NCBI RefSeq assembly: GCF_006345805.1
Contig: NC_043000.1
Span: forward strand, 54,746,001-54,810,000
DNA: 64,000 nucleotides
Source of the DNA: Octopus sinensis
Lineage: Eukaryota
Reading direction: 5' to 3'
The stretch's first letter is position 1. Every line of letters starts with the position of its first letter. Under the pieces are notes generated by a model. The model saw only the letters and a list, made by a program, of their open reading frames with translations, did not search any database and was not told where the DNA came from. This document shows, in pieces, positions 1,811 through 63,408 of this stretch. Both the position numbers and the translations under genes were made by a program.

Positions 1811-2500
1811 CACCTTTCTTCTAACTAGAGTATATTCAGCGCAATAGGGAAAAAGACGCAGTTTTTTAAGATGACTTATCAGAATTTGGAATAAGTTTAG
1901 ATGTTATTTCAACTAACTCTTCAACAAAAAAGCCATGGCTTTCGGACAACGATAGATGTTTATCCCAAATGTATACATATGAAATTTAAATTATTTATAT
2001 TACCCCTATGAACTAATAATATTTTCGTAAATAGTACCCACGTATAAGAAGAAATTTTACTTGTTATTTCTATAAGGTGAGGCCGCCACAAAGACATCAT
2101 TTTCTATATCATTTTCTTCCCGCTAGGTATGAAAATAAAAATAAGATGTTAACAAATTTATGAAAGGAACTTCGATACGTTTATAATGATTTCATTCAAC
2201 TATGGTTGTATATGTTTTCACACCACATAATATGACACCGCATATTTTCAAACATCTATAGGTTGAATTTTTCTGTCGTTTTCTTCTCTCTCTCTCTCTT
2301 TACACACACACACACACACACACACCACACACACACACATACATACACATATATATATAGTGGGAGAGAGATATTGAAAAGTAGGTAGATACGTAGAGAT
2401 AGAGATAAAGATATATATGCATATGTATACATACATAATTATATTCATGTATACATATATATACAAACATATACGTATATATATATATATACGTATATAA

Positions 2501-2583
<83 letters not shown>

Positions 2584-2591
2584 CATATATA

Positions 2592-2657
<66 letters not shown>

Positions 2658-3339
2658 TATACATATATACATTTACATATTTATGCATATATATACGTGT
2701 GTACGTAACGTAACTTCTTGCTACATTGTTATATGTGTAAGTGTGCATGGGTGTGCGTATTAATTTATATATTGCAATTTACTAATAAACTTCAATAGTC
2801 ATCTAACGGTACTCAACAGACTTTGACAAGGGATATAGACTATCTTATGGTGCATTTCACACAGCAATAAAATATTCTATATTACACATACAATAATTTT
2901 ATCGAGTGTAATGTGGCGAAATATCATACAATCTATATGTCCATTTTTGTGACTAATGTTTCAAGATATGCAAAGACCACATTTAATGAAAACATTAATG
3001 AAGTTGGTCAATGTAACTGGTTCGGCATGATTGTATCGCACCTGGTATCTACCATATAAAGACACATTAATAAATTTTATATTGTATGAATGTATGTATC
3101 GTATATTCTTTGCATAGTATCAGATCACACCAGTGAAGGAATATACATAAACTCATGCACAAATACATACACAAATCGTCCTCTCTCATATCATTATCCT
3201 CCTCCTCTCCTACCCCTCTCTCTCTCTCTCTCTCACTCTCTCCGTGCATATATGTGTACGTATATTTTTATACATACATATATATATGCATGCATCAGTA
3301 TGTGTGTATGTACTACACAAGCACACACATATGTATCTA

Positions 3340-5215
<1,876 letters not shown>

Positions 5216-5306
5216 TACTTACTTTGATACTTACTTTGATAGGTTTCGGCCATTATTGGCCCAGGCCATGTCTAACTTAATAGCACCACCTGGTGAAGTC
5301 TTCAAG

Positions 5307-8300
5307 TCAGAATTTGGGCACTATGGCCCACTCAAGTAGAGAGTTATTGTTTACAGAGACATATCCAGGTGTAGGGGGTTTATCCGGGATTTCTTGAAGG
5401 AATCTGTCCAAAGACTTCTTGAACCCTATAGGGTCAGTTTCTGTTTTAATGTGTTTTGGTGTAATGTTAAAGAGAGCGGGGCCAATTGAGGTGAAATAAT
5501 TGTGCCGTATTGTTGTTATGAGATGAGAGTGCGATTTTTGTTTGGGGGCGGATGGCACGGGGCCCAAGCCTTGGATGTACCTTAAAGGTGATGCCAACAT
5601 CATTTGGGCAATGCTGATGGAATATTTTCCACATCATGCAGATGATGTAGCGCTCACGACGACGTTGGAGAGAATAGAGTTTTAGCTTTTCTAGCCGACC
5701 CCAATAGTCGAGGCCTGTCATGCCATCTATCTTTTTTGTGATTGCCCTTTGAGGTGCTTCAACTTTTATGATACCTTGTATTGTGTGGGGAGACCACAGT
5801 GGACAACAGTATTCAAGGTGGGGTCGGGCAAAAGTGGAGAAGAGAAGGATAATGGTGTGGATATCTCTCGACTGGAAAGTTCTGAGAATCCAGGAACACA
5901 TTCTGCGGGCCATGTCAACTTTGGTGTTTATATGAGTGGCCCAGCTTACGTTGTGTCCACAATTACTCCCAAGTCTCTGATGTTGTTGGACGCCGCGAGA
6001 GTTTCACCTGAAGGAAGGGAGTATGGGAGTTTCAGGGCATCCTCTTTTCCAAAGTGGATTAGCTCAAATTTATCCTCGTTCAGCAGCATATTGTTTTTTT
6101 CTGCCCATTGGATAACAGCCAGTAGATCTGACTGAAGGCATGTCCGGTCACTCGCCTCATTTATGACCTTCTGTAGCTTGGAGTCATCTGCAAAGATTTT
6201 TATGTTGCTGTGCTTGATGGTGTCATTAATGTCATTAATGTAAATGATGAAAAGAAGTGGGCCTAGCACAGTGCCTTGCGGAACGCCACTACTGACTTTG
6301 GCTGGGCTTGATTTTACCCCTTCAACTACAACATGTTGAGATCTGTCTGTCAGGAAACACTCAATCCATTTCAGTAACTTTCCAGAGACACCAATGTTGG
6401 ATAGTTTTTTCAATAGGATCTTGTGATCGACCCTGTCGAAGGCCTTACTGAAATCAAGGTAGATGACATCGGTGTTGGAGCCCTCTCCCAAAGCTCTCAA
6501 AATGTCCTCAAAGTGATCAGGAGCTGCGTTAGGCAGTCCCTTCCATTACGGAACCCATGTTGGTTGGAGATCAGCCGTCTGTTGCTTTCCAGAAATTGGG
6601 TTATTCGAGATCTCACCACCCTCTCAAATACCTTGATGATATGAGAGGTGAGTGAGATCGGGCGGTAATTCACTGCAAGGGACTTGTTTCCCTTTTTGAA
6701 AACTGGGACAACAGACTGGGACAGAAGGTTTTTTGGAATATAGCCAGCATCCAGTGAGTTTCTCCACAGATTAGCAAGGGGAGATGCAAGTTGGTGTCGA
6801 CACACCTTCAGGACACAAGCAGGGAATCTATCGGGGCCTACTGCTGAATTGTGTTTATTTCGTTTATCGCCGCTAAGACATCAGGGGCACTAAACGTTAT
6901 GTCCGATATAGTGTGTTGGGGGTTGACATCACTGATACAGCCCAGATCGGCCATATCAGGATTGCTGAAAACAGAGCAGTAGTTGTTTCTGCAGTATCTC
7001 GGCCATGGATTTGGCATTATCTTGGAGAGTGCCAGTTTCGTCAATTAGAGGGCCTACAGTGGGACACAGTGACCCTGCGTTTCCTCGCAAATGAAAAGAA
7101 CACTTTGGGGTTGAGTTTGATTTTTTCAATGGCCCACTTCTCCTCAGCTGATCTTTGGTTATTGATGAGGGTCTTCATGCATTGTTGGAGGTTATATTTT
7201 TTGGATTCAAGCAGTGCGATAGCCGTCGAATGTGTGTGTTGCTGTTGGCAGTACTTTAGTTTGTTAATTTTTTTGTTTGTTCTTTTTATTTTTCTGATAA
7301 TGGTTTTTCTGTTTTGGGGGATTCTGCACTTTTTGTTCACAGGTCTTGGTGGGGAGTGTTTTGCACATATGTCTGTGACGGTTGACAAAGATCTGCCAAG
7401 ATGTTTTATGGTTGGTGGAGATGTGTGTATGTGTAAAGGACCAGTCAACATTTGATAGCTCGTTCCTGATTGCATCCCAGTTGGCTTTATGGAGATCCAT
7501 GTTGTCAAATGGGTGGGCTGGAGGAAGGTCACTAGGATTAGCTTTCGGCTGGTGGAATTTCATGTTACAGAGAACCATGTCATGGTCTGAAAGAAGGGTT
7601 TTTTCCACTGTAACGTTATGTATAGTGTTAGTGTGGTTACTAAACACTAGGTCCAAAATGTTCTGATGTCTTGTTGGTGCAAGGACAAGTTGGGACAAGA
7701 AAAACTCATTCGTAAAGTCGAAAAGTGACTCTGCTGCTTCTTTGTCAGCGGTTGAGGCGGGAGTGCTTGGTTTCAAACAGTTTGTAGTCCAGTCAACACA
7801 GGGTAGATTGAAGTCTCCCATCATGAGTATGTTGCTAGAATGGCACTGTTGAATAAAGCACTTAATGCTGTTGAGGCATTCTTTAAAGCACAGTATGGGT
7901 GTTTGGGGCGGCCTATAGAGCCCAATTACTGTCAGGTCATTGGCTTTGTTGTGCACGGTGACTGATTCACAGTAGCCGTTGGAGAATATACTATTTCCAT
8001 CTGCCGTAAATGAATCATGCAGGAAAATGGCAGTTCCACCTTCCTCCTGCCGATACGATCCGCGCGCGCGGATGGTTGTGAAATTCTTCACTCTCACTTC
8101 GGCTTCCAAGTGGGAGTTGTCAAGGTGGGTCTCAGTGAGAATGAAGAAAGGGATGTGGTGTGAATGGTTACCAACCCAGTCTTCAATGAATTGGACCTTC
8201 CATTTTTGTGCATTGATGGAAGGGCTGACACCTTGTGCATTGAGTAGGAATGTGGAGGTTAGTGTAGTGGCTGGTTTTGACTGTTGCAGGGGGCTTGGAT

Positions 8301-8418
8301 TTTTTGTGTGTGTGTTAGTGGCAGCAATGTGGGGAATTGGTGCACTGGGGTAATAGCATAGGATGGTGTGAGTGATGGCTAGAATGTTTTTGTGTATCTC
8401 TTTTGCCATGTTCAACAT
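5307..8418 (-). CDS. LINE-A ORF2: APE endonuclease plus reverse transcriptase, split by several 1-bp frameshifts
   Basis: ORF-track pieces 7264-8418, 7041-7532, 6838-7044, 6497-6805, 5946-6500, 5467-5913 and 5307-5603 are collinear parts of one CR1 ORF2. Confidence 0.9.
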
Positions 8419-8420
8419 GG

Positions 8421-9536
8421 CTAAAAAAGAATTTTCCTGCTTAGGGAGCAGTTTTTGGCTGGAGGTGTGGTTGCACTGTTGGATAGGGTTGTAGTTTCCA
8501 CTTTTGTTGTTGTTGTTTTTGTGTCTTCCTGAAAAGACTGGACCAGCATTACTGCAGCATGGTGTGTTCTATTTTTATTGTTATTCAGGTTTGTGTGTGG
8601 CTTGGGGGCCCCGTTTCTGTTTGTGCGTCGGGTCCCTGGAAGATGAGTGAAGGGACAGTCACTCAGTAGACATGTTCTCTCACGTTGGGAATACCGGCAG
8701 ATTTTGGGACTCCGAGTTGTGTGTGTTTTGAATTTCGATTTACTATTTGGTGGTGTTGATGTCATGGGATGCGTGCTTTGGCCTTGGCCGGTAGTGCGTC
8801 TAGTGCCGGGTAGATGCGTGAAGATGCAGTCACTATTTGTGCAGAGTCTCTGGCGCAGTGAATAGCGGCATATTTGGGGATTTCTTGTTTGTGCCGTGGG
8901 GGGCGCATTCTGCTTCCTATGTTTCTTTAAGTTTTTGTTACTGCAGTAGTATTGAGGTGGTGATGTGGGGAAGAGGGCAGTGGTTTCTTATTTGGTTTTC
9001 TGTCGGTATTTTTGGTGATAGAAGACGATGGTGGCAGCGGTGTGGTGATGATGATGATAATTGTGGTGGTTGCTGTGAGAGCGGTGAAAAGATACTGGTA
9101 TTTAGTGAATCGTCTAGTAAGCTAGAGTTGAGGAGTGGCTGTGTTGTTCTTGTTGCTGTGGCTGTTGTTGTGTTGTTGTGCCTGACCGATGTCAGGGTCA
9201 GCCATTGTGCTGGGAACCAGGAGTGGCTCATTCTGTTGTTGTTGTTGTTGTTGTGGCTGCTGATTTTCTAGCTGTTGTTGTTCTTGAACTGTGAAAATAT
9301 GTAGAAGCTTTTCATAATGGCCTCTTATCAGTTTGAAAGATACTTCGATATGTTTCAACTTGCTACGAATCTGTTTGACGGATCGTGTGTTGACCACTTG
9401 ATGTTTTTTCGGCAATCTCATTCAAACACAAGACATTTAGATTTTCTGTTTGGGAAAGAGAAAGCCATGTGTTTATTAAAACATCAATTTCGTTATCAGA
9501 CCAATTTCGTCTGTTGCAGGCCTGCAAGTTAGTCAT
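8421..9536 (-). CDS. LINE-A ORF1 (frameshifted): Myb/SANT-like domain, Q-rich linker, two CCCH zinc fingers
   Basis: ATG at 9536 gives MTNLQACNRRNWSDNEIDVLINTW...EIAEK. Removing one base from the T6 run at 9404-9409 continues it into HQVVNTRSVKQIRSKLKHIEVSFK. C-x8-C-x4-C-x3-H motifs lie at 8814-8870 and 8643-8699. Confidence 0.75.
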
Positions 9537-9879: not shown

Positions 9880-11457
<1,578 letters not shown>

Positions 11458-13807
11458 TCAGAGTTGGAGAGCTTTCAAGGTTTCTATATTTCATCTGGGA
11501 TTAATACTGAATCTAAATCTATATCATCTTTGTCGTGTCGAAATATCCATTAAAATTACAAATATCGCGTCATAAGTATATAATATTCAATTTCTAACAG
11601 TAGCAATGTTGTCCATCTACATCTGTGATGTTTTAAGTGATTGCACTGAGCAACGAAAAATTTGTTAGTCGCCAAAATCATTCAAATTAATTCATAGCAA
11701 TTTTGGATGCTGTGATACCACCGCCTGAAACACACACACTCACACACAGACACACACACAAAGTGTTTTTACCAGACAGAACTTAAACTTTAAACTAATG
11801 CATTCTGTTTAAATTGTAGTTTTTCCCAATATGATGTACTGTAAATTTGTAGAATCGGATTAAAATAGAGGTTATGAGTTCAATTTGGTCATTGTTCATA
11901 TTACATTTGGCAACAAGGTAAATTAGGATCATTGAACTGAGAATGCGATATTTGATATCATAGTGTCATTGAGTTTTATGAACGTATTTACTGACATATG
12001 TGGAGGGATTTGTATCTAGCGTTTTACTCTTCTACATTATCATTTAATTTCCTTGCAAGGCGCACTTTAAAATCGTCTGTCAGGTTTGATAATCGATATT
12101 TCAAGTATTTTTCGGGAGAGAAACAAGTAAATAAAAGTTCATTACGAAAAAATTTAGCATAACCTACATGTAGTTTTCTGTAGCTGTGGTGAACAGAGTA
12201 TGGTTAGGCATAGAAAAATCACTGATCTTCTAAAACAATTATATGTTTGGTTTTCTGGAGTAGATTTTGGAGACCAAGATAAACTTGGGCTACCCATAAT
12301 TCTCTGTTTAGCCACTTTTGCAATGGACTCACGGACGAGGAAAATATTTTAATTTTGGTGTATCTGTAGATGTTACCATAGCCGTAAGACTACCGGTATG
12401 ATTGTTATTTTTGCGTCGTTAATGTGAAAGATTAGTCTGTTTAGCGAACTGTACTCGTCGGGAAAGGAATGTTCATACAACTATTTACCCCCCAAGTTGA
12501 TCTTACTACTTTTGAAGTTTAAAACCTACATAACTTCATATCTGACACAGATGGTTGCAGGGAAAATGAATATTAAATAAGTCTCTACACTAAAGCATGT
12601 TTTTTTTAATGATACGTAATCTCAGTCGATCAAAATATTCCAAAGAACCTAAGTATCCAGTGTAAAGAAAAAATAGCTGTCTACAACCGGAAAGTAAATA
12701 TCAACATACCAGAAAAGACAAGTGGCGCTTCTTTCTTGCTTCAACGAATATGAAGATTTTATCTGAACAAAATATGGATGGTTTCTGTGTCAACAGCTTC
12801 GCCAGAGCCCGTTAAACAATAGAAACCACTGCATTTTTATTAATTGATCATTCATTTGAGCTTAAACTAGGAACGACTCGACTATTTGTTTTGAATTTTA
12901 AACGATGAGTTTCTTGTTCAGACAATAAAGTGGTTACTTAAATATTCTTGTTCTATGGGCTTAAGGGACAGAAGAGCAAATAAAGATTATAGTGAAAAAA
13001 GTGATATGTTATTCAATGGAGAAAAGTACATAAAGAACAATGAATATCATTGAAGGACTCTAAGGTCAAAAAGAAATCACCATTTCCCCTTCCACTGAGC
13101 TTGATTGATATATTGCAATGTACTTAAATAGCAAAATATAACTTCTGGATTGTCTTCTACATTTGTGTTTATTTTTTCGTAATTGTTTATGTGACAATGT
13201 GGTACACAATTTTGGTATTTTATGCGAATACTCTCTGATGAGTGTGGGAGAATTTCAAATAGGTGACATCGATTACGTCAAAACTTAGAGCTAATCTGGA
13301 AACCCAGGTGTCATCAACAGATTTCATGGTCACTGGGTGATATCTATGTCATTGTATTCAGTATATTTGAAGAGGTTTTACGGATCAGGATTTGGGGATA
13401 TGATAAAAGTTATTAATAATCTTTCAAAATGAATTGAATCTGCTCTTGAAAGTATACGTGAAACTATTTTCACTCTACATTTTTCCTGGAGGTCTTTCAC
13501 CAATTATTTGATCAAATAATTATTTCGTTGTTTTTTTCAAATAGTGGACCACATTATCTATTTCAGGTCTCCCCAGAACTGCATTTATACGTATGTAATC
13601 CTGTTTTTAACTCCAGTGGTATGCAATGACTATTGTTTTCTATAATATCATTTCTTCGTGTGTTCTAAATTTGTATATTAAACACGAATCAAAACTATGA
13701 AATTATATAGAAAACATTTCCACTATTCTTTCTTTCGTTTCTCTCACGTACTGCGTAAAGATAAGCATTCATACACTCAAACGCACGGGGACATAAGTCT
13801 ATAATGC

Positions 13808-25610: not shown

Positions 25611-25761
25611 GTTTTAATAAATTACAGATACAAAAGAGTGTATAATTTTTGGCAAACATGAGTGTGTACAAATTAAAACATATAGAGACACTTGCACATA
25701 CGTTACTACAAAGAACAATTTTGGTGATGATGATGATGATCATCATGATCATGATGATTCT

Positions 25762-25970
25762 TTATTTTGGCTCAAAGCCAGCATTCCTAAGAGTAAGCGG
25801 CAAGTCGATTACATTGAAACCAGTGCTCGACTGGCCCTCTTTTATATTCCGTTCCCGAAGGGATGAAAGGCAAAGTCGATACCAACGTAACTCGAAGCCA
25901 GAAAATAGAGACGGATGAAATGAACTAAGCATTTTGTCCGGCGTGATAATGAGTCTGTCAGTATACTCCT
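25762..25970 (-). mobile_element. SINE family 1, diverged copy
   Basis: AAGTCGATTACATTGAAACCAGT...GGATGAAAGGCAAAGTCGA. Confidence 0.75.
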
Positions 25971-25984
25971 TTAATAAAAATGCT

Positions 25985-25987
25985 ACT

Positions 25988-26040
<53 letters not shown>

Positions 26041-26053
26041 AATAATAATAATG

Positions 26054-26116
<63 letters not shown>

Positions 26117-26347
26117 TTAATAATAATAATTAGAAGAAGAAGAAGAAGAAGAAGAAGAAGACCACAAGCCAGCAAATTCAGGAAAATGATAAGTCGATTA
26201 CATCGAAGGATTAGTTCAGCTGGTACTCCTTTTATAGAGGCCGACAAGTTGGAACACGAGAACTCAGAACGTAGATTGCTACACGAAACACCACTAAACA
26301 GTTTTATCCGTACTATAACTATTCTGCTACGTCGCCGCCTCAATTTG

Positions 26348-26419
<72 letters not shown>

Positions 26420-26482
26420 AATAGTAATAATAATAATAATACTAATACTAATAATAATAATAACAATGATAATAATAATAAC

Positions 26483-26535
<53 letters not shown>
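25985..26535. repeat. (AAT)n, (AAG)n and (ACT)n tracts flanking a diverged minus-strand SINE at about 26140-26340
   Basis: Direct reading; SINE motifs AAGTCGATTACATCGA, GAACTCAGAACGTA and CGCCGCCT. Confidence 0.85.
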
Positions 26536-26537
<2 letters not shown>

Positions 26538-27406
26538 CACGAATATGGAAGAATTTTTTTTTTTTATATCAGCGTATTTATTGAAAAGTTATTCGAAAGA
26601 TACATACTTGCTGGCTACAGAAAATCATGAAATGCATTTATTGGAATATATACTTACACAGAGACATGAATTAATTTTCCTCATTTCACATGGCATGTCT
26701 AAGAGTTTATTCTAAAATTATATAAATACCCTTGAATGATTATATATCTTGACAAAACCCGAATCAGCCCACTAAGGTAAATACTACTTTCTGAAATTTT
26801 AAGCCAAATGGCGCCAGCAAGGAAAGGATCATAATAAGATTTCTCCAATTAATGTCTCATGTTACATAATTGTAAGTGAGAGAAAGTATTCTGCAGATAA
26901 AACTTTTTCCCGTGTTGTATCTCTCTTTTACAAATATGTTATTCTCTCTATTTATTGAAAACTGGAATATGGAATATGGAATATTAAAATTGGAATAATA
27001 ACACTCTGAAGCACACACTGAAGTATATATACACACTCGTGAGCACACACAGAACACACAATTATCTTATATACGTATAATACAACATACACGTATGTGT
27101 GTGTGTGTAGATCTGTACATAACAATTGATATGTATATTAAGTATATACATGTGGGAGTATGTGTGCATATATGAATGTATGTTTATGTGTGCAGATGAA
27201 AACAAAAAAAAGCAAACATAAATATCAAGTCAGTCATATACAATGTCACTTACTAATAAATTCCCCCTCAGTCTTTCACACACACAAACACACACGCACG
27301 CACACACATGTATATATATATAAATTTATCTTCCTATTTGGATTATATATATACATGCATATATACATATAAATATATAATATATATATATATTATATGT
27401 ATATAT

Positions 27407-38689: not shown

Positions 38690-40753
38690 AATTTTATTTA
38701 GTTTCAGTTCACAAGCTGTGGCCATGCTGGGGCACCACCATTTGGTGTTGCTACATGATTTTACTTCACGAATGCTTTTTAGCAAATGCCATCAGGTGCA
38801 TGAGAGAGTTTGATGCAGCTGCCCTCATCTGCACCTCCTACCGTGAAGTTGGATCATCTGGGACACCTGACAAGATGAGATCCCGTTTCATTTTAAAGAC
38901 ATCTGCATCCACTCCATGCAGGTCTCTTAGGTTCTTCGGGAGGATATTGAAGAGCTGTGGGCCTCTGAAGCCCAGGCTATCACAGTATCTTGTCCTACAT
39001 CTTGATGGCAAATTTGGAGTCCTTGGCACTATGCAGTGGCGCCCAGTTCTGGCATTTGTGTAACTCTCGATGCCAAAGTTTGGTACAAGTTCTTCTAGGA
39101 CCTTCCAGATGTATATTATGGCATATCTTTCTCGCCTACGCTCTAAGGAATAGAGTCTCAATCTCTTGAGTCTTTCCCAATAGCATATATACAGCACAGA
39201 GGCTATCTTCTTCGTGTATCTTCGTTGGATCGCCTCAAGTTCTGTGATTAACTTGACACTGGATGGTGACCATAGATGTGAGCAATAGTCAAAGTGGCTT
39301 AGGACAAGTGTCCTCCAGAGGACCATCATGGTTTCCTGGTCTCTTGTTCTAAATGTTCTAAGAATCCACCCGGTCAGCCGCCTACATTTCATTCCCAATT
39401 TAGCAACATGCACATGTTGCATAATCACTCATGTAAATACCCAGGTCTCGCACTGATTGTGCCTTTGGGATTGCAATTCCTCCAGGTCCAGTGTATTTAT
39501 TGGGTATTGCATTTAGTTTTGCATGCTGATAGCATAAAGCTTGAAACTTTTCAGTATTGAACTGCATGCTATTCTTTTCAGCCCACTTGTATATTTTGTC
39601 CAGCTCACATTGCAGGTGCTTAGTGTCTTCAGGGTTCTGTATTGCCTGTGAAACTTTTGTATCATCTGCATAACTTGTGATCGTGGCTCTCTGCGTGGTT
39701 GAGGGCATGTCTGAGAGGGCCATTATGAACAGTAGTGGTCCCAGAACAGTGCCTTGCGGAACACCGCTCACTATTTGCGTGTTAATGGAAGTGGCTACTA
39801 CCACCTCATTTCCATTGGCTGCTACCACCTGATTTCTATCCTTCAGAAAGTCATGAAGCCATTCTCCCAATTTTCCAACTATGTTTGTGACATATCATTC
39901 CATGATCGACTTTATCAAAGGCCTTTGCAAAGTCGAAATATATGATTTCTACATGTGAGTGGTTGAGCAGTCGTTTCAGCACCCAGTCATAGTGTTGTAG
40001 GTATCTGAGTTAAGCAGCTTCTTCCTGGTCAGAAACCATGTTGGGTGTCAGGCAGCAAGTCATTTTCTTCAAGGAAGGTGATTAGTTTTCTTCTGACTAT
40101 TCGTTCGATGACCTTGCTGACGTGTTAGGTCAGAGCGATAGGTCTGTAGTTTTTGGCCTCCGCTCTGCTACCTCCTTTATGAATAGGGCACATTTTACCT
40201 TCCTTCAGTTTTCTTGGAAGTTTGCCAGTTGCAAGGAAGCTCTGAAAGAGGAAATGCAGTGGTCTTGCTAGGACTCTCTTACATACTTTTAGAAGGATTG
40301 CTGGGAATCCATCGGGGCCAGTAGCTGAGTTTGTTTTCATCAATAGCCTTTATTACATCGTCTTCCTTTATATTGATGTAATCAATCATCGCTGCCTCTG
40401 ATTTTATATCTGCAGTGGTAAAGAAGTCAGTTGGATTGCTGACTTGAAAATGCTCTAGGGGTGGAGTGAAAATACTCTTGAATTGCTCATTTCGTATTTC
40501 ACTTACCCTCATTGGATTTCCTGTGAGTGTGCCATCCTTTTCAAGGAGTGGCTCTATCCTACAGTGCACCTAGCTGTTTCTTTGGCATACCCGTAGAAAG
40601 CTCTGGGGTTAGATTGTATGTTGTCTATATCCCAGGCTTCTTTGTCTGCTTTTTCTTTTTCATGGGAGAGTTGCAGACATTTTTCAATTTCCAACAGTTT
40701 TATTTTCAGGCGGGACTTTTCACTGCTTTCAATTTGTTTGTTTAGGCGATTTG

Positions 40754-45079: not shown

Positions 45080-46560
45080 CACCAGCTAAAATCACACGAG
45101 GAACAAACACAAGAAAAAAAAACAAAAACGCCAGGACGTGGGACATGCAAGGAATTAGCAAATACTCAGGGAAGGAATAAAAAGGTAGTTATACGCTTCT
45201 CACTTCGTCAGAAACAGGAGACGATAGAAAGTCCAAGAGAAGAGGAGGCGGGAAAAAGCCCCAACGATCTTCAAATCGTTACATTTTGAAATGACCGGAA
45301 GGGAATGTGTGAAGAAAAAGTTCTTTCTAAAACAGTAGAGGTAACTGTGTGTATGTGTGGACATGTGCGTGCGCACGAGTCTGAGTGTGTGTGTCTGTGT
45401 GTGATTGTGTGTTGTGTTGTGTGTGTGGTGTTGTGTGGTGCTGACTCTTTGTATGTGTGTTCATGTATGTGTGTGTTGTGTGTGTGTGTATGTAGTTCGT
45501 GTGGGAGGTATATGTGAGGTATATGTGTGTGCACATGCGTGTGTTTACACATGCATGTATATGTGCGTGTGTGTATATGTACATGTGTGTATGTATATGT
45601 GCGTGTATACAGAAATAAAATAAAATATAAAATAAGATTGATAAAAAATAGGGTAAAAATGAGGAAAGGTACGCGATGAAAAAATAAAATTAATGAATAA
45701 AAAATGAATAAAAAATACAAACATAACAGATACAAAATAAAAAATAAAACTTAAAGAGATAAAGTAGAAATAAATACAATCATTAAAAAATTAATACAAT
45801 GAAAAAATTTTAAAGTTTGACGGAAAAAATTATTAAAAATCCACAAAAAGAATAACTGTTTAAAAAAGTGAGTGGAGATAAGATAGGATACAATAAGATA
45901 AAATGTTATTTTTGAAGGAGGGTGTAGAGACAGTCCTTAAGAGGAGGGGTTGTGTTGAGTCCGAATGGGGTTTGTGTTTGTAGACTGAAAATGTAACGCT
46001 GTTCCAGGCGGAGTCCAGACTATATGGATCCGTGCTAAAAGACGAGGCCAAAAACGGAGATATTAGAGGTGGAGTGGTCAGCCAAGCGGAAATGACGAGC
46101 GAAGGGGGTGTCCGTATGTAGCCGAACATCTCATAGATGTTTGGTGAACCTCTCCGCCAGCCGGCGTCCGTCTGACCAACGTAGAGTTTATTGGAGAGAT
46201 TATGTCTAGTGCAATAGATAAGGCTTTAAGAAGTGTAAGAGAAGGACTTTCTAATGTGGAGGGTGTGCTGGTTGGATCCAGCGAGGGAGGTGGTTTTGGT
46301 GATGAAAGTGGAGGTGTGACAGCGGCATCTAGAACAAGGGGAGGATCTGAGTGGGACTGGGATGGAAGAGGGAGAGTGCTACGGAGTAGTAGATCGCGTA
46401 GGTTACGGAGGCGTTTAAAGGAGGGCAACGGTGGGTTGTGGAAATTGGAGTGGGTAGTAGGATCTAGCTGGAGACGACGGAAATATTTATCTCATAGTGT
46501 GATGAGGTAAGGTAGATAAAAGAGAGGTCAGACATAAAGAAGAAATAAGGGTTATAGAGA
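45080..46560 (-). mobile_element. Degenerate Penelope-like element 3' part (GIY-YIG) plus downstream terminal-repeat-like segment
   Basis: SFKRLRNLRDLL, KLYVGQT (frameshift) RRLAERFTKHL*DVR, LRLEQRYIFSL and GLN. CTGACGA core remnant at about 45190-45218. Confidence 0.75.
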
Positions 46561-50323: not shown

Positions 50324-51135
50324 TAGTTTTATTTTTATAGCGTGCTTTCACTTCACTACCGAGCGCAGCTCTGTGTGCCTTGGGAATGTGCTGTGATTTG
50401 TTGTGATGCTTTGATGGTTTTTCTGTATGTTATATGTGTTTGTAAGTCCTGGTGTTTTTGTTATGTATTTGTCTGAATATTTTTTATCATGCCTAATGCA
50501 CCTACTATGATAGGAATTGTTTCTGTTTTCAGATTCCACATTCTAGTTACCTCTATTTCCATGTCTTTGTATTTTGAGAGTTTCTCCATTTCTTTTAGAG
50601 ACACGTTATCATTTGCCGGTATTGATACATCAATTAGAAAGCACTTTTTTTCTTCATGATCTCTGACAACTATATCTGGTCTGTTGGCCTTAATTTCTCT
50701 ATCTGTGTGTATCGGCATATCCCAGAGTATGGTTGCTTTCTCGTTTTCTGTGACCTTTTCTGGTGTGTGCCTATACCATCTTTTTTCTGTTGTTATTCCA
50801 TAATGTTGGCATAGCTTCCAATGTATGTAGGTTCCAACTCTGTCATGTCTGTGAATATATTCCTTCTTAGCCAGGACTGGGCAGCTAGAGATAATATGAT
50901 TTATTGTTTCTTGTCCATCTCCACATATTCTGCAGTTACTTGTAATATTTCTTTTCATTACACGTTTTTAGTAATTTCTGGTGTGGAGGCTTTGGTCTTG
51001 TGCTGCAATTAAGAATCCCTCTGTTTCTGCTTTGAGTCCTGAGCTTCTCAACCATTGCTGGGATTTTTCTTTGTCTATTTCTTTTGCGTTTAGTTTAGTC
51101 CAGTATTTACCACGTATTTATTATTCCAGTATTTA
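50321..51135 (-). mobile_element. 5'-truncated R4/Dong-like RLE LINE (zinc knuckle plus restriction-like endonuclease)
   Basis: LKAETEGFLIAAQDQ, CRICGDGQETINHIISSC (C-x2-C-x8-H-x4-C), RPDIVV, FLIDVSIP and EKLSKYKD. (AAT)n on both sides. Confidence 0.92.
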
Positions 51136-53900: not shown

Positions 53901-55917
53901 TCCCTGTAGTAAATAAGGAACACACATAAAGTTAGTGATACGTCAACCCATAATATATACATACGTAAGTACATTTGCTAGTGGGCTGTTATGTAGGTAG
54001 CTATACACATAAGGCTAGGTAAATGGATATGAAGTAAACAAATATATACATAGGCAAGTAGATAATAGATAGGAACATAGGTAATATGGACAGATAAGTA
54101 CATGCACAAACGCACACACAACAGATGGAAACGCATGACCGTACAGACACACACACTCCACACACGTGCATACAACCACACAAACACACACAAAAGCACA
54201 TGAATATGTAGAATATATATATATATATATATATGTACATATGCATACATACATCTATGCATTCCCACACATACATGTATTCAAACATATATACTTACAT
54301 GCATGCATTCATAAATGCATACATACTACATACATGTGAGCATACACTAACACACATGTACACTGATGCATACGCATGCGCACCGACAAAAAAGAACGCA
54401 GCACCAATACCGGACAGTCAACATCCGTTGGCAAGGTTGCAAAAGCAACGAAAGTTTTGGAAGAAAATATATAAATAATAAATGCATGGAAATCGAACTG
54501 GTGAGTGTGTATAAAGTATTAACACAATATGTCTTTCCCTTGACACAACATAGTGTACATTTTTGATCCATGTTTGTTTTATTGTGCTTGATGAGTGTAA
54601 TGTTGGTTGTGTAATTTCAATGTGTCTTAATATTGTATAATGAATGTTGTGTTCGGTTACCAGAGTAGGTGCTTATTGTACAGTAGATGTGTAGCGTGTG
54701 AAGGTTGTTCTATTAAGCTATTCTATTAAATTGTTAGTTATTCCATTGAATCTTCAGCTATTCTATTAAATGTTCAGTTACTCTATTGAATCGATAGTGC
54801 TTGCTGCAATGTGCAGTGTATTACTGGTATAGCTAGTTATTGAGCAGTATGTAATGTTGTAAGGCCTGGTTTGTGAACCCTCCTAGTCTTTGATTCATAG
54901 ATAGAAATTTCACAAGCGTATTAGAATTAACAAAACGATTTATAAGGAATCAGTTCAGAAATTATTTCGTAACATAAATGTCAAAAATTTTGATTTTGCT
55001 GAAATATCCAGAATAAATAGATCATTATATAAAATAAATAATTTTCTCGCAATATGTTTTTAAATATATTATTTAAAGAGTATGGTATGGAAATATGGCA
55101 GCCCACCATATACGTCGGTTTAGAATAGCCTACGATTTTGTGCACGTGACACAAAATGCGTTGAAAAACGAACCAGAATTTAAAATCATAATGTAGTCTT
55201 CATAAAAATATTAAGGCAGAATGTAATTTTTAAACTACTCATTTTGTATTGCTGCTGTAATAATGCAACTTCCTTTGAAATGTTCAAAGGATTGCAAACT
55301 AGTAATATTCAGGGAAGATGTAAAATTGATTTTATTTTTAAGTTATATTTTCCAGCGCCAAAAGCTTAATTTAAACGTTACTTTTTTTCTTTCATTACAT
55401 GTTTCATTATGTTACGTTGCACTTTGTAATAAAAGACTTTCAATGTATGTATGTATGTGTATATATATTGTTTGTTTTTGATTTCATGTTTTTAATATGC
55501 GAAACATTTCTTTGAAGAACAATTTTCAAATCTATTGATATAAGTTTAAAAAATGTAACTTTGAACGGAGACGCAATTGTTAAGCAATTCTCCAGAATTT
55601 TTTTACACATTTTCAAAAAGCTTCCTTTCAATTATGATATTTCATTAAAGCTGATTTTGTCTAGCGACTAATAAAGGAACATTGCAATATTTTATAATCG
55701 GATTACTTTCTTGCTTTTCATTTTTGCGCAATGACTAATATTACAGTTTCTGAAACAACTCCGAAGTAAGTGAAAGAAATATAAATGTGAAGGTTTGTTG
55801 TTCATAACTTGTGATTTTGCATTTACAACTGAAATATGGTAAAATATAACGTGTCTTAAATGGCACAACAATGCAGAGTTGACTATAATAACTGTTATAA
55901 CTTAATTATCCATACTC

Positions 55918-55967
55918 TAACATAATAATGATATTTCGGAATACAAAAATTCCTTCTTCAGATATCG
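55918..55967 (-). ncRNA. Type I hammerhead-like motif in the left Penelope terminal repeat
   Basis: GATAT CTGAAGA A GGAAT-ttttgt-ATTCC GAA ATA-tcat-TAT T^ATGTT. Confidence 0.7.
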
Positions 55968-57278
55968 CTAGAAATTGATCGAGTCACTGCTATAATCGAT
56001 TTGCCAACGCTTACAGATCTTTTTCCGGAAGCGTTTCTTCCGGAATTCATCATGAAAAGAGCGTGAGGGCGTCCATGTCTCAAGCTCCTGTGTGTCGGCA
56101 CATCCGCAGCGCCGCTCATGCTCCTTCTTCACCAGGTACGTAAATGACATCTTCATACTCACATCTTCCCGTGAAGAGGCAGACAGAATATTCACGACGT
56201 TCAACAACATGGACATGAGCACACGGTTCACCATAGAACATCCCCTATAGCTACTCAACTTGCAACTGAAAATAACAGAAGAAGGAGAGATCCACACCGA
56301 GTTCTACAGGACAGCAGCCAGAAGAGATATTTTTTTTCATTACAGTTCAGCCCTTCCACTCAGTGGGATAAGCCAGAAATGAACTTGGACGCAAATGCAG
56401 CAGGACAGAGGACAAGGTGACCCATACTACACGCTTCCTAGAGGTATTGAAAACCAACGGGTACTCTATAGCCATTGTAAATCGGCTTAAGTAACTAAGC
56501 AAACACGTCGAACACATAGAAAACCCAGCAACACATGTTTCCTTAAAATACTCCATTTCCGCGAGAGGATACAACATACAACTAGCCCACTCCATTCTCT
56601 CTCTGAGAAGACATCTAGCAAAGAAACGAGCAAGGGACAGAAATCAATGCACACTAGCTAACTCCCCCTTCCGTGACACAGATTTATGCTAACGGGTAAA
56701 TGTTGTGTATAGAATACAATGTTACAAATGCCAGAAGCTCTATGTCGGTAGCACAACAAAACCGTTACACATTCGTATCAAAGAACATCTGAACACGAGA
56801 GCATCCTCCTGCAGAAAGCATCTAGACAGATGCCGGAACACGAACAAAAGCATAGCAGTCACAAGTGAGGCCAACGAAAGAAATTTGTGTAATCTAAGTA
56901 TTAAGGAAGCTATCCTCATAGACAGACAAGAACACCAAATTAACAACAGGATGGAGGTTCATTATTTACATTAATTACATTTGATGTTGGCAAACAATAT
57001 ATTATTTAGCTACATCTGGATGCATGTTGATCCACATTTGATAACACGCTCATGTATTATAAAAATTAAAAAAAGAAACAGGACGTATAATACATAACTT
57101 AGAAGCAGAGCTGCGAATATGCCAATACACATGAGATTGAGACAAGTCCGCCTTCATACACTTCTCATGAGGAATTCCGGAGGTGCTTCGTGAGACCACT
57201 GAAGTGACGCCTCTGGAAAAAAAAACGTTCTGTAACCTTTGGAAAACCGATTATAGCAGTGGCTCGATCAATTCGTAG

Positions 57279-58048: not shown

Positions 58049-58473
58049 CCCCCACCGGTCCCTACGCTTTTTCCTTTGCCATTGATACACTTCGATGTTT
58101 TTTAACACTATACGTTTATAGGAGATGCTTTCTCGAGACGAGTACGGCAGTTTTGTGTATCCTCTTTAAGTAAGATATAGAGAAATAAATAAATATATAT
58201 ATATATATATATAAGTTTAACAATTAAGGATAATCTCTTAATAAGGGATCTTAACAAGAAATTATCGGTAGCTAGCGTGAAAACCTCAAAAAGAAAAGAA
58301 TTCGAAAATAATTTTTTTCTTTTGAACAAATTAATTATATCTATATTGTATAGAGGGCATTATTACACATAAATGCCTCACACTAGGAGGGACAAAGTCA
58401 TTACTACTACCAAAATTATACTAATCATACCCAAATGCAGTTTTTTCAAAGCAAGACATTTAAAAATGAATTT

Positions 58474-58531
58474 AGTTCTGTATCACCGTGATTTCACATT
58501 CAACTTACGTCTAATGATCGTCAGCAGAACT
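58474..58531 (-). ncRNA. Type I hammerhead ribozyme fold, complete
   Basis: AGUUCUG CUGACGA UCAUU-AGAC-GUAA-GUUG-AAUGU GAA AUCA-CGG-UGAU A^CAGAACU; all invariant core nucleotides present, 7-bp stem I. Confidence 0.88.
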
Positions 58532-59180
58532 GATTCTGAACCATCATAAATAAACTACCAACTTACGTACGAAGACGAACAGACAACTGCTCACTCCGCC
58601 AAGCACATGGAATGTTTATAAATCATATATCCGGTAAATGCGGGCTTTTTACGAACTGCATGTCGGGTAATGAAAAGTATTTCGGAATAAGTTTAACAAT
58701 TAAGGATAATCTTTAATAGGGATCTTAACAAGAATTATCGGGTAGCTAGCGTGAAAACCTCATAAAAGGAAAAGAATTCGAAAATAATTTTTTTCTTTTG
58801 AACAATTAATTATATCTATATTGTATAGAGGGCATTATTACACATAATGCCTCACACTAGGAGGGACAAATACAATATAGATTAATTAATATAGATATAA
58901 TTATTGTTCAAAAGAAAAAAATATTTTCGAATTCTTTTCTTTTATGAGGTTTCACGCTAGCTACCCGATATTTCTTGTTAAGATCCCTTATTAAGAGATT
59001 ATCCTTATTGTTAAACTTATTCCGAAATACTTTTCATTACCCGACATGCATTTCGTAAAAAGCCCGCCATTTACCGGATATATGATTTATAAACATTCCA
59101 TGTGCTTGGCCGGAGTGAGCAGTTGTCTGTTCGTCTTCGCTACGTAAGTTTGGTAGTTTATTCATGATGTGTTCAGAATC

Positions 59181-59237
59181 AGTTCTGCTGACGATCATTA
59201 GACGTAAGTTGAATGTGAAATCACGGTGATACAAACT
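59181..59237 (+). ncRNA. Second copy of the same hammerhead, with a 1-nt deletion in the 3' strand of stem I
   Basis: Identical core, stem II and stem III; CAAACT instead of CAGAACT after the site. Confidence 0.8.
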
Positions 59238-59357
59238 AAATTCATTTTTAAAATGTCTTGCTTTGAAAAAACTGCATTTGGGGTGATTATTATAATTTTG
59301 GTAGTAATGACTTTGTCCTCCTAGTGTGAGGCATTTATGTGTAATAATGCCCTCTAT

Positions 59358-59408
<51 letters not shown>

Positions 59409-59811
59409 TAATATATATATATATATAGAGGAAAATCTTTACTGCAGCGAAGCTAATCAACGCTTTATAGGAGTAAATAAGTATTGATAACAGAAAGAAA
59501 GTGAAGGACAAACTTTCGTAGATCAAATTCTTTAAACAAAATTCATATACGGTTTAGAACCAATCTTAAAATATAAGTCATATAAATACATAAATAGTCA
59601 TTAAAGTGATGGCTGTGTTCGTGAGCACCAACATAGCTAGAAATAGGAGTCAAAATAACTCTTAATCATGTAAGAGCACTTTTCTAACGACATGCCTTTT
59701 GGTTGTAAAATGTGAATAGCCACTTTGATAATTTATTATAATATATTATATATATGTGTGTGTTGTGTGTTTTGTGTGTGTGTGTATGTGTGTGTGTGTT
59801 TGTGTGTGTTG

Positions 59812-59855
<44 letters not shown>

Positions 59856-62174: not shown

Positions 62175-63408
62175 CAGGGATTGGACAAAATACTGCAAAT
62201 ACCTAGCATCATAGCATCAAAATCTTCAAATGTCTATAAAACCGTCAAAAGCGTGTTTATTGTCAGTTTTTTTTTATTATTAGTGTCGCTCAATATGTTT
62301 TGTTAAAATAGCTGTTTCTTTTCAGATATCATCAGAAAAAGATAACTAAAATTCATTAAAATGACAGATATACCGGACATTCAAAGAGGTCAAATTGTTG
62401 GCGCTCGTATGTCAGGTGCTAGCTTAACGAAAACAGCCGAAATATTTGGTATATCAAGAAGTACTGTCTCGAAAGTAATGACAGCCTTTGAGAAAGAGGG
62501 AAAACATCCTCGTCGAAACAAGACTCCGGAAGGGAACCAAAACTTTCAGAGAGGGACCGTCGGACTCTTATACGAATTGTTCAAAAGGATCACAAAAGTA
62601 CAGCTCCCAAAACTACTGCAGAGCTTAATAACCACCTCGAAAACCCAGTTTCTACAAAAGCTGTTCACCGGGAGCTGCACGAAGCCGGATTTCGCGGGAG
62701 GGCTGCAATCAGTAAACCACTATTTGAAAAACAAACGTTGCAAAGCGTTTAGAGTGGAGTAAAGACCTACATAATTGGTCCCTAGAGTAGTGGGAAAATG
62801 TTATTTTCTCGGACAAGTCATCCTTTGCCACATTTCCGACCGAGTATACGTGCGGAGACAGCCAAAAGAACCATTTGATCCAGACTGCCTTCTTCCAACT
62901 GTTAAACATGGAGGAGGGTTTGTAATAATCGGGATTGGAAATCAGCCGGCACAATGGTTTACCTTCATGGCCGAATTAGTAGTCAACACTAAACATTTTA
63001 TCTGATCAAATTCATCCTATGGTTGCGTTAGTGTTTCCGGAGAGAAACGCAATGTTTTAGGATGATAATGCACCAATTCACACAGCTAAAGTTGTTACTG
63101 AATGGCACGAGGAACAGTCTAATGAAGTTGAACATCTTATTTTGTTACTACAGTCCCCTCATCTCGATATTATTGAACATTTAGAAAAACAAGTAAGGAG
63201 TCGATATCTTCCGCCATCATCACTACAAGAAGTGGAAACTGTTTTAGCTGAAGAATGGACAAAAATACTTTTGGAAACAATTCAAGCTTTGTACCAGCCC
63301 ATGCCTCGTAGAATTCAAGCTGTAATTACTGTCAAACGCGGTCTTACCCATATTAAAATAAATTCGCTTGAAATTTTAAGGTCTTTCCATTATTTTGTCC
63401 AACCCACG
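62175..63408 (+). mobile_element. Tc1-like DNA transposon, about 1.23 kb, with decayed transposase
   Basis: Imperfect TIRs of about 30 bp (CAGGGATTGGACAAAATACTGCAAATACCT / AGGTCTTTCCATTATTTTGTCCAACCCACG) in TA context. Motifs RGQIVGAR..GAS, ISRSTVSKV, VIFSDKS, TVKHGGG, DDNAPIH, SPHLDIIEH and MPRRIQAVI; frameshifts and stops. Confidence 0.92.

What the first reader, a model, noticed from the sequence alone, without database searches (positions are those of the whole stretch)
58211..59365. Retrozyme-like insertion: a 476-nt hammerhead unit as a longer-than-unit tandem plus an inverted circular permutation
Seen: a non-coding unit read 1.39 times forward, then once in reverse starting from a different point of the same circle. 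Neither end coincides with the ribozyme site, and both ends join (TA)n through 3-5 bp microhomology. Known: metazoan non-LTR retrozymes and hammerhead satellites (newt satellite 2, Schistosoma Sm-alpha, Dolichopoda pDo500) are tandem type I hammerhead units that give monomeric or circular RNAs and are thought to use PLE RTs; PLE insertions often show inversions. Inference: a cDNA copy of a circular RNA made by rolling reverse transcription with a strand switch. I know of no such family described for this lineage. Alternatives: a solo PLE terminal-repeat multimer, or a chimeric read, since the copies differ almost only by 1-bp indels.
Basis: partly seen in the sequence, partly recalled or inferred. 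Interest (0 to 1): 0.95.

Follow-up and report, generated by a model that had tools for sequence, protein, structure and literature searches.

The report
Hammerhead retroelement inserted in TA repeat
A 476-base non-coding repeat with a hammerhead-ribozyme-like motif sits in a (TA)n microsatellite of a cephalopod-like genome as a 1.4-unit tandem joined head-to-head to an inverted copy, which is the usual insertion footprint of Penelope-like retroelements and their ribozyme-bearing hitch-hikers, so it is probably a new member of a known kind.

Summary
A 476-nt unit is read 1.39 times forward (58211-58870) and 1.03 times in reverse (58871-59365) from another point of the same circular permutation. 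Both outer ends join (TA)n through 3-5 nt of microhomology, and the copies differ almost only by 1-nt indels.

Each arm carries one hammerhead-like motif with every core nucleotide and three helices. It is my descriptor's only hit in the window and had none in 60 Mb of random sequence. It is non-canonical: U·U at the base of helix II, and Rfam Hammerhead_1 gives 14.5 bits against a gathering score of 34. The sense monomer folds far better than shuffles (z -5).

With polarity set by the ribozyme, the 3' ends point outward and the 5' ends meet in the middle. Partial tandem, inverted 5'-truncated copy and microsatellite target are the published insertion signature of Penelope-like elements (PLEs). 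A decayed PLE endonuclease lies 12 kb away.

Best reading: one PLE-mediated insertion of a non-autonomous retrozyme-like element. A circular RNA template is possible but not shown. Genome-wide copies, RNA and cleavage could not be tested, and a long-read artefact is not excluded.

The parts
58196..58213 (.). Left (TA)n tract of the target microsatellite. Its last 3 nt (ATA, 58211-58213) are shared with the unit.
   Evidence: Sequence read.
58211..58686 (-). Copy F1, one full 476-nt unit. The ribozyme-sense strand is the - strand, so its 3' end abuts the left (TA)n.
58474..58531 (-). Hammerhead-like motif of F1. Helix I is AGUUCUG/CAGAACU, followed by CUGACGA. Helix II is CAUU/AAUG plus GAC/GUU with a GUAA loop, closed by U·U. 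Then come GAAA, helix III AUCA/UGAU and UA^C, with cleavage predicted between 58481 and 58480.
58687..58870 (-). Copy F2, a partial tandem unit (unit positions 1-186). It is the 5'-truncated end of the left arm.
58870..58871 (.). Head-to-head inversion junction, where the 5' ends of the two arms meet. About 1 nt of microhomology.
58874..58903 (+). A 13-14-nt slippage duplication (AATATAGAT...) at the 5' end of the inverted arm.
58871..59365 (+). Inverted arm. It reads unit 142->1 and then 476->~131, about 1.03 units. The ribozyme-sense strand is the + strand, so its 3' end abuts the right (TA)n.
59181..59237 (+). Hammerhead-like motif of the inverted arm. It is identical to the F1 motif except for one base missing from the 3' strand of helix I (CAAACU instead of CAGAACU). 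Cleavage is predicted between 59231 and 59232.
   Evidence: Not detected by Rfam.
59361..59427 (.). Right (TA)n tract, about 34 repeats. Its first 5 nt (ATATA) are shared with the unit.

Best explanation
This is the product of one retrotransposition of a non-autonomous, 476-nt, hammerhead-bearing element. That makes it a non-LTR retrozyme, or equivalently a derivative of a Penelope-like element (PLE) terminal repeat. It was copied by a PLE-type reverse transcriptase/endonuclease into a (TA)n microsatellite.

Inferred mechanism:
1. The microsatellite was nicked on both strands.
2. (TA)n is self-complementary, so each 3'-OH could anneal to a short UAU/UAUAU stretch inside a longer-than-unit RNA template, either a circle or an uncleaved multimer.
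3. Each 3'-OH primed a cDNA. One ran 1.39 units and the other 1.03 units.
4. The two cDNA ends met and were joined with about 1 nt of homology and a 14-nt slip. This leaves 3' ends outward and 5' ends head-to-head.

Shown: the anatomy, the motif, the RNA foldability, the microhomology, the microsatellite target, and a PLE relic in the same genome.

Inferred: the RNA intermediate, the PLE helper, the double priming, and ribozyme activity.

The locus has one ribozyme per arm, so it cannot release monomers and is a dead-on-arrival copy.
For: - Anatomy and junctions.
- Hammerhead core complete, with three helices. My descriptor hits only this unit in 128 kb of window sequence (both strands) and finds nothing in 2 x 30 Mb of Markov-random sequence.
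- The hammerhead conformation (-9.1 kcal/mol) is within 1.2 kcal/mol of the minimum free energy fold.
- A U·U pair at the base of helix II is described for the HHR_Amex2 motifs of axolotl retrozymes. The retrozyme monomer associated with them self-cleaved 22% in one hour (PMC7229834).
- The sense monomer folded as a circle gives -120.8 kcal/mol against -89.3 +/- 6.3 for shuffles, z -4.96. The antisense strand is weaker, z -3.76.
- GC content is 33%, as in animal retrozymes (PMC7229834).
- Microhomology with (TA)n at both ends has a chance probability of about 9e-4.
- PLE insertions are described as partial tandems with an inverted 5'-truncated copy at the 5' end and a bias for microsatellites (PMC8557442).
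- Retrozymes are related to PLE terminal repeats.
- A frameshifted PLE GIY-YIG endonuclease relic lies at about 45.9-46.4 kb. It is 64% identical to an Octopus bimaculoides GIY-YIG protein, E 6.5e-27.
- Penelope families are annotated in Octopus vulgaris (PMC13282606).
Against: - Only one locus could be studied, with no second copy in the window. The collections that could be searched returned no match. Repetitiveness, conservation of the motif and empty sites are therefore untested.
- Rfam scores the motif well below threshold. There is no G10.1-C11.1 pair. The 86-nt region does not fold into a hammerhead as its minimum free energy structure and is no more stable than shuffles.
- No target-site duplication can be read in (TA)n.
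- No PLE ORF is linked to the unit, and the unit shows no similarity to the PLE relic.
- The indel-dominated differences suggest a poorly polished long-read region.
Confidence: 0.55

Rival explanations
1. Assembly or sequencing artefact. A fold-back or chimeric long read, or a mis-join through TA repeats, created the inverted arm or placed a fragment of a tandem array here.
For: The copies differ almost only by 1-nt indels, many in homopolymers (F1 vs F2: 0 substitutions, 8 indels). This is typical of unpolished long-read consensus. A near-perfect 490-bp palindrome is hard to polish and assemble. PLE-type structures are known to trouble assemblies (PMC8557442).
Against: A simple fold-back read would run back into the reverse complement of the left flank, but the two flanks are unrelated beyond TA. 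Both junctions have only 3-5 nt of overlap, too short for an assembler's overlap. The two arms start at different points of the unit, and the polarity pattern matches a known biological footprint.
Confidence: 0.12
2. DNA-level rearrangement of a short satellite. A small tandem array of a 476-bp hammerhead satellite underwent a fold-back inversion by replication template switching, with no new retrotransposition at this site.
For: The inversion junction has about 1 nt of homology and an adjacent 14-nt slippage duplication, as in replication-based rearrangements. Hammerhead satellites exist in animals (PMC7229834).
Against: This does not explain why both outer ends abut one (TA)n tract with microhomology. 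It also does not explain why the array is only 1.4 units, or why the polarity is exactly 3'-out/5'-in as in PLE insertions.
Confidence: 0.13
3. Solo terminal-repeat multimer of an autonomous PLE. The 476-nt unit would be the pseudo-LTR of a coding PLE, and this locus a pair of extremely 5'-truncated copies.
For: The PLE footprint. Hammerheads normally lie in PLE pseudo-LTRs. Retrozyme consensus sequences match PLE termini in Xenopus. PLEs are present in this genome.
Against: The left arm runs 1.39 units with no ORF sequence between repeats, so the template carried at least 1.4 tandem units without coding sequence. The unit is not similar to the PLE relic in the window. The difference from the best explanation is largely one of naming.
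Confidence: 0.12
4. Foldback or MITE-like DNA transposon with long inverted arms, in which the hammerhead-like motif is a coincidence.
For: There are two inverted arms of about 490 bp with a short spacer. The Rfam score is sub-threshold.
Against: The outer termini are not inverted copies of each other, since the left arm overhangs by 130 nt. A chance hammerhead is very unlikely. The strand-asymmetric RNA foldability favours an RNA element.
Confidence: 0.03

Closest known systems
Metazoan non-LTR retrozymes (Cervera & de la Pena 2020, PMC7229834), including axolotl Rtz_353 with the HHR_Amex2 motif and mussel retrozymes
   Same: A non-coding, AT-rich unit of a few hundred nt in head-to-tail arrangement, with a type I hammerhead and a well-folded RNA. 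The U·U at the base of helix II matches HHR_Amex2.
   Different: The unit is 476 nt, slightly above the reported 150-450 bp. The tandem is only 1.39 units with one ribozyme per arm. An inverted copy is attached. The host is a cephalopod-like lineage, for which I found no described family. Expression and circularity are untested.
Penelope-like elements (Penelope/Poseidon/Neptune/Naiad) and their insertion architecture (Craig et al. 2021, PMC8557442)
   Same: A partial tandem plus an inverted 5'-truncated copy at the 5' end, insertion into a microsatellite, and a hammerhead in the repeated part.
   Different: There is no RT/GIY-YIG ORF, so the element is non-autonomous. No 30-40-bp tail was recognised. 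The hammerhead has a 4-bp helix III, unlike the minimal PLE variants.
Hammerhead satellites (newt satellite 2, Schistosoma Sm-alpha, Dolichopoda pDo500)
   Same: Tandem type I hammerhead units.
   Different: Those are long arrays. This is a single 1.2-kb insertion with an inversion. It was not tested by sequence here.
L1 twin priming (inversion of 5' segments during target-primed reverse transcription)
   Same: A second priming event from the other nicked strand gives an inverted segment within one insertion.
   Different: In L1 the two segments come from one linear RNA and together make less than one element. Here each arm exceeds one unit and both 3' ends face outward. This is a recalled analogy and was not tested.

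Membership tests
Hammerhead ribozyme, type I (Rfam RF00163) | Conserved core: C3 U4 G5 A6 N7 G8 A9, G12 A13 A14, A15.1-U16.1, and H17 before the cleavage site | tested here: met
   CUGACGA ... GAAA ... U A^C is present in both copies.
Hammerhead ribozyme, type I (Rfam RF00163) | Three helices around the core with helix I open (type I topology) | tested here: met
   Helix I has 7 bp, helix II has 4+3 bp with a GUAA loop, and helix III has 4 bp. This fold costs -9.1 kcal/mol against an MFE of -10.3. The descriptor finds no hit in 60 Mb of random sequence.
Hammerhead ribozyme, type I (Rfam RF00163) | A Watson-Crick pair (usually G10.1-C11.1) at the base of helix II | tested here: not met
   The pair is U·U. 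A natural precedent is axolotl HHR_Amex2; the monomer repeat associated with it self-cleaved 22% in one hour (PMC7229834).
Hammerhead ribozyme, type I (Rfam RF00163) | Score at or above the Rfam gathering threshold | tested here: not met
   The F1 copy scores 14.5 bits against 34, E 0.65 on 131 nt. The inverted copy is not found. Nothing reaches gathering score in the window.
Hammerhead ribozyme, type I (Rfam RF00163) | Conservation or covariation of the helices among family members | not testable with these tools
   Only two near-identical copies exist in the window. No relatives were found.
Hammerhead ribozyme, type I (Rfam RF00163) | Self-cleavage at H17 | not testable with these tools
   This needs in vitro transcription of a monomeric and a dimeric construct.
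Metazoan non-LTR retrozyme | Head-to-tail tandem of units of a few hundred bp, with at least two hammerheads flanking a monomer | tested here: not met
   The tandem is real (1.39 units), but each arm has only one hammerhead. This locus cannot release a monomer. Whether the family has such arrays elsewhere is unknown.
Metazoan non-LTR retrozyme | Non-coding, low GC (<45-50%), and no LTR/PBS/PPT | tested here: met
   GC is 33%. There are only short ORFs with no protein relatives. No tRNA-like part was found.
Metazoan non-LTR retrozyme | Multi-copy dispersed family | not testable with these tools
   No host genome is available. There is no other copy in the 64 kb.
Metazoan non-LTR retrozyme | Expressed as linear and circular monomeric RNA | not testable with these tools
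   No RNA data are available. Indirect evidence only: the sense monomer folds with z -4.96.
PLE-type insertion (mobilised by a Penelope-like element) | Partial tandem plus an inverted 5'-truncated copy adjoining the 5' end | tested here: met
   With polarity set by the hammerhead, the 3' ends lie at 58211 and 59365 and the 5' ends meet at 58870/58871. The pattern is as described in PMC8557442.
PLE-type insertion (mobilised by a Penelope-like element) | Microsatellite target | tested here: met
   (TA)n lies on both sides, with 3- and 5-nt microhomology.
PLE-type insertion (mobilised by a Penelope-like element) | RT plus GIY-YIG ORF inside the element | tested here: not met
   There is no such ORF in 58211-59365. 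The element could only be a non-autonomous passenger.
PLE-type insertion (mobilised by a Penelope-like element) | PLEs present in the same genome | tested here: met
   A frameshifted GIY-YIG relic lies at about 45.9-46.4 kb on the - strand. Pfam GIY-YIG gives E 3.4e-4 (21.3 bits against a cut-off of 22.6). It is 64% identical to an Octopus bimaculoides GIY-YIG protein. Whether any PLE is active is unknown.
PLE-type insertion (mobilised by a Penelope-like element) | A 30-40-bp 'tail' extension at one end | tested here: inconclusive
   Nothing is recognisable between the unit and (TA)n. Without a family consensus, a tail cannot be told from unit sequence.

The most novel reading that the evidence does not exclude
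The locus would be a genomic fossil of reverse transcription around a circular hammerhead RNA. Two cDNAs, primed at different points of the same 476-nt circle from the two strands of a nicked (TA)n, each ran past a full turn. That would be the first direct sequence evidence that animal retrozymes integrate from circular RNA, and the first such family in cephalopods.
Probability: 0.2. Interest if true: 0.65.

Novelty: new member of a known kind. Interest (0 to 1): 0.4.

Why it matters
How animal retrozymes are copied back into DNA is still inferred rather than shown.

- **What this insertion offers.** It appears young and internally near-identical, with both arms longer than one unit. It preserves the priming sites, the joining point and the template topology of one event.
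- **What a survey could test.** If the family is multi-copy, the junctions of many such insertions could test three things: priming by microhomology on microsatellites, priming from both strands, and a circular versus a multimeric template.
- **Range.** It would extend ribozyme-bearing PLE passengers to cephalopods. PLEs are annotated there, but I found no ribozyme families described.
- **A possible side effect (speculation).** If transcribed, the 490-bp inverted repeat would also be a hairpin-RNA source.

Taken alone, a single locus in a noisy assembly is an ordinary-looking PLE-type insertion.

Tried and rejected
- **Rfam.** No family reached gathering score anywhere in the window. An E<=10 search of 2.5 kb gave only low-complexity microRNA-like noise. 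Hammerhead_1 appeared only when 131 nt were searched, and not for the inverted copy.
- **Thermodynamics of the motif.** The 86-nt region does not fold as a hammerhead and is no more stable than shuffles (z -0.3). Thermodynamics alone therefore does not support the motif.
- **Search for other copies.** All of these returned nothing: BLASTN in the window, a 564-aa concatenate of all open frames of the unit against the protein collection, two 21-mers each in metagenome and prokaryote genome collections and one in viral contigs, and the motif sequences as text in papers. None of these collections is a cephalopod genome, so this says little about copy number.
- **SINE-like origin.** No tRNA genes were found, and no tRNA, 5S or 7SL similarity.
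- **Foldback or TIR transposon.** Rejected, because the termini are not inverted copies of each other.
- **Simple fold-back read.** Judged unlikely, because the flanks are unrelated.
- **Hammerhead next to the PLE relic.** None was found, only TG/TA hairpin noise.
- **Exhaustive representative-protein search.** Not run, because made success very unlikely.

Full report

Yes. The sequence, the repeat finder and a BLASTN of the first unit against the whole window agree on the layout.

- A 476-nt unit occupies 58211-58686 (F1).
- It continues head-to-tail for another 184 nt, to 58870 (F2, unit positions 1-186).
- It is followed at once by an inverted segment, 58871-59365. This reads unit 142->1 and then 476->~131, about 1.03 units, so it starts from a different point of the same circular permutation.
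- A 13-14-nt slippage duplication lies at 58874-58903, just inside the inverted arm.
- No other copy is detectable in the 64 kb.

The insert lies inside a (TA)n microsatellite, with 9 repeats on the left and about 34 on the right. ATA at the left junction and ATATA at the right junction could belong to either partner. Given the unit's composition, random breakpoints would show this at both ends with P ~9e-4.

The copies differ almost only by single-base indels. F1 vs F2 has 0 substitutions and 8 indels. F1 vs the inverted arm has 5 substitutions and 18 indel events, more than half in homopolymers. Biological divergence rarely gives that ratio. It looks like residual long-read error, so the three copies were probably identical when made.

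**2. Is there a hammerhead?**

Rfam does not call one. Nothing reaches gathering score in the window, and nothing appears at E<=10 in 2.5 kb. Hammerhead_1 scores 14.5 bits (gathering 34, E 0.65) only when 131 nt are searched. That alignment covers just helix I and CUGACGA. The inverted copy, which lacks one base in helix I, is not found at all.

Read directly, the - strand of F1 (58531->58474) has these parts:

- helix I: AGUUCUG/CAGAACU
- core: CUGACGA
- helix II: CAUU/AAUG, extended by GAC/GUU and a GUAA loop
- core: GAAA
- helix III: AUCA/UGAU
- cleavage site: UA^C

Every invariant core nucleotide is present.

I wrote a simple descriptor: helix I at least 5 bp, helix II at least 4 bp, helix III at least 3 bp, with a mismatch at 10.1/11.1 allowed. 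It finds only this motif in both strands of the window. It finds none in two sets of 30 Mb of Markov-random sequence. A rough calculation expects about one hit per 30 Mb, which is about 3e-5 per unit.

The hammerhead conformation costs -9.1 kcal/mol, against an MFE of -10.3 for the 58-mer. The 86-nt region does not adopt it as its MFE and is no more stable than shuffles.

The one departure from the canon is a U·U pair at the base of helix II. The same feature is described for the HHR_Amex2 motifs of axolotl retrozymes. The monomer repeat associated with them self-cleaved 22% in an hour (PMC7229834).

I conclude that the motif is very unlikely to be chance. It is probably a weak or dimer-dependent ribozyme. 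Activity is untested.

**3. Other properties of the unit**

- It is non-coding. It has only short ORFs, and a concatenate of all its open frames has no relatives in 5.8 billion proteins.
- GC content is 33%.
- Reconstituted from the cleavage site and folded as a circle, the sense monomer has an MFE of -120.8 kcal/mol, against -89.3 +/- 6.3 for dinucleotide shuffles (z -4.96). The antisense strand is weaker (z -3.76). This fits an element selected at the RNA level, with the ribozyme strand as the functional one.

**4. Polarity and architecture**

The hammerhead strand is taken as sense. The left arm (58211-58870) is then sense on the - strand, and the right arm (58871-59365) is sense on the + strand. 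Both 3' ends face outward onto (TA)n, and the two 5'-truncated ends meet head-to-head at 58870/58871.

This matches what Craig, Arkhipova and colleagues describe for PLE insertions: partial tandems, an inverted 5'-truncated copy adjoining the 5' end, and a bias for microsatellites. Hammerheads typically lie within PLE pseudo-LTRs (PMC8557442).

**5. Host and helpers**

- A LINE endonuclease ORF in the window has Argonauta hians as its best named relative.
- At about 45.9-46.4 kb on the - strand there is a frameshifted GIY-YIG endonuclease preceded by the SFKRLRNLRDLLLRS-type linker, which I recall as typical of PLE proteins. Pfam GIY-YIG gives E 3.4e-4, just under the cut-off. The relic is 64% identical to an Octopus bimaculoides GIY-YIG protein, E 6.5e-27.
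- The genome is therefore cephalopod-like and has hosted endonuclease-bearing PLEs. Thirty Penelope families are annotated in Octopus vulgaris (PMC13282606).
- The relic is not similar to the unit.

**6. Most likely mechanism (inferred)**

A PLE enzyme nicked the (TA)n on both strands. (TA)n is self-complementary, so both 3'-OH ends could anneal to short UAU/UAUAU stretches of the element's RNA and prime cDNA synthesis. The template was longer than one unit, so it was either a circle or an uncleaved multimer. One cDNA ran 1.39 units and the other 1.03. Their ends were then joined with about 1 nt of homology, after a 14-nt slip.

This accounts for the different permutation of the two arms, the outward 3' ends, the microhomologies and the inversion, without a strand switch.

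The snap-back it implies would rest on only about 1 nt of pairing. The identity of F1 and F2 (0 substitutions) fits a circle read twice, but it fits a homogeneous donor array equally well. I put the circle at about 0.2-0.3.

Each arm has one ribozyme, so this locus cannot itself release monomers.

**7. Rivals**

- **Long-read or assembly artefact.** The indel noise favours it. The unrelated flanks and the very short junction overlaps speak against it.
- **DNA-level fold-back inversion of a small satellite.** This does not explain the (TA)n junctions and the polarity.
- **Terminal-repeat multimer of a coding PLE.** This is nearly the same biology under another name.
- **Foldback DNA transposon.** The termini are not inverted copies of each other.

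**8. Comparison and novelty**

The feature works like a non-LTR retrozyme and is inserted like a PLE. Membership of the retrozyme family cannot be completed. Multi-copy status, arrays with two ribozymes, circular RNA and cleavage are untestable here. The locus itself fails the criterion of two ribozymes flanking a monomer.

I found no paper describing hammerhead repeats in cephalopods, and none that prints this motif. It is best filed as a probable new member of a known kind.

Its value is as a clean single-event footprint that could inform how retrozymes integrate, provided the structure survives read-level checks and the family proves to be multi-copy.

Noticed in passing
window 45,900-46,430 (- strand): A decayed, frameshifted C-terminal part of a Penelope-like element. 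It has an SFKRLRNLRDLLLRS linker followed by a GIY-YIG endonuclease spread over two frames. It is 64% identical to an Octopus bimaculoides GIY-YIG protein. It appears 5'-truncated, lies next to microsatellites, and has no RT upstream.
   Followed up: partly
window 55,900-55,970 (- strand; CUGAAGA starts at 55961): A second, much weaker hammerhead-like match. It has CUGAAGA, then GGAAU/AUUCC after an extra A, then GAAA, a 3-bp AU-only helix III and a 5-bp AU/GU helix I. It passes only my loosest descriptor, for which about 0.11 chance hits per window are expected. It is probably chance.
   Followed up: partly
window 5,467-8,765 and 38,838-39,870 (- strand): Remnants of APE-type LINEs. The first has endonuclease and RT domains in several broken frames. 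Its best named relative is from Argonauta hians (49%).
   Followed up: partly
window 50,461-50,958 (-) and 62,361-62,762 (+): Two further transposon fragments: an RT C-terminal zinc-binding piece (zf-RVT, below the Pfam cut-off) and a Tc1/mariner-like helix-turn-helix N-terminus.
   Followed up: partly
window 58,874-58,903: A 13-14-nt tandem duplication (AATATAGAT...) lies exactly at the 5' end of the inverted arm. It could be a template slip during joining or a consensus error in AT-rich sequence.
   Followed up: partly
window 2,000-5,300; 9,900-11,600; 25,760-26,580; 45,300-45,740; 59,755-59,852: The microsatellite load is very heavy, with TA-, TG/CA- and trinucleotide-rich tracts and GC down to 13% in 10-12 kb. 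One TG/TA hairpin at 45,519-45,616 gives sub-threshold mir-297/mir-3149 matches, which look like low-complexity noise.
   Followed up: no
window 58,211-59,365: The two arms form a hairpin with a stem of about 490 bp and a loop of about 45-60 nt. If the locus is transcribed through, it would give long double-stranded RNA and could be a small-RNA source against the family. This is speculation.
   Followed up: no
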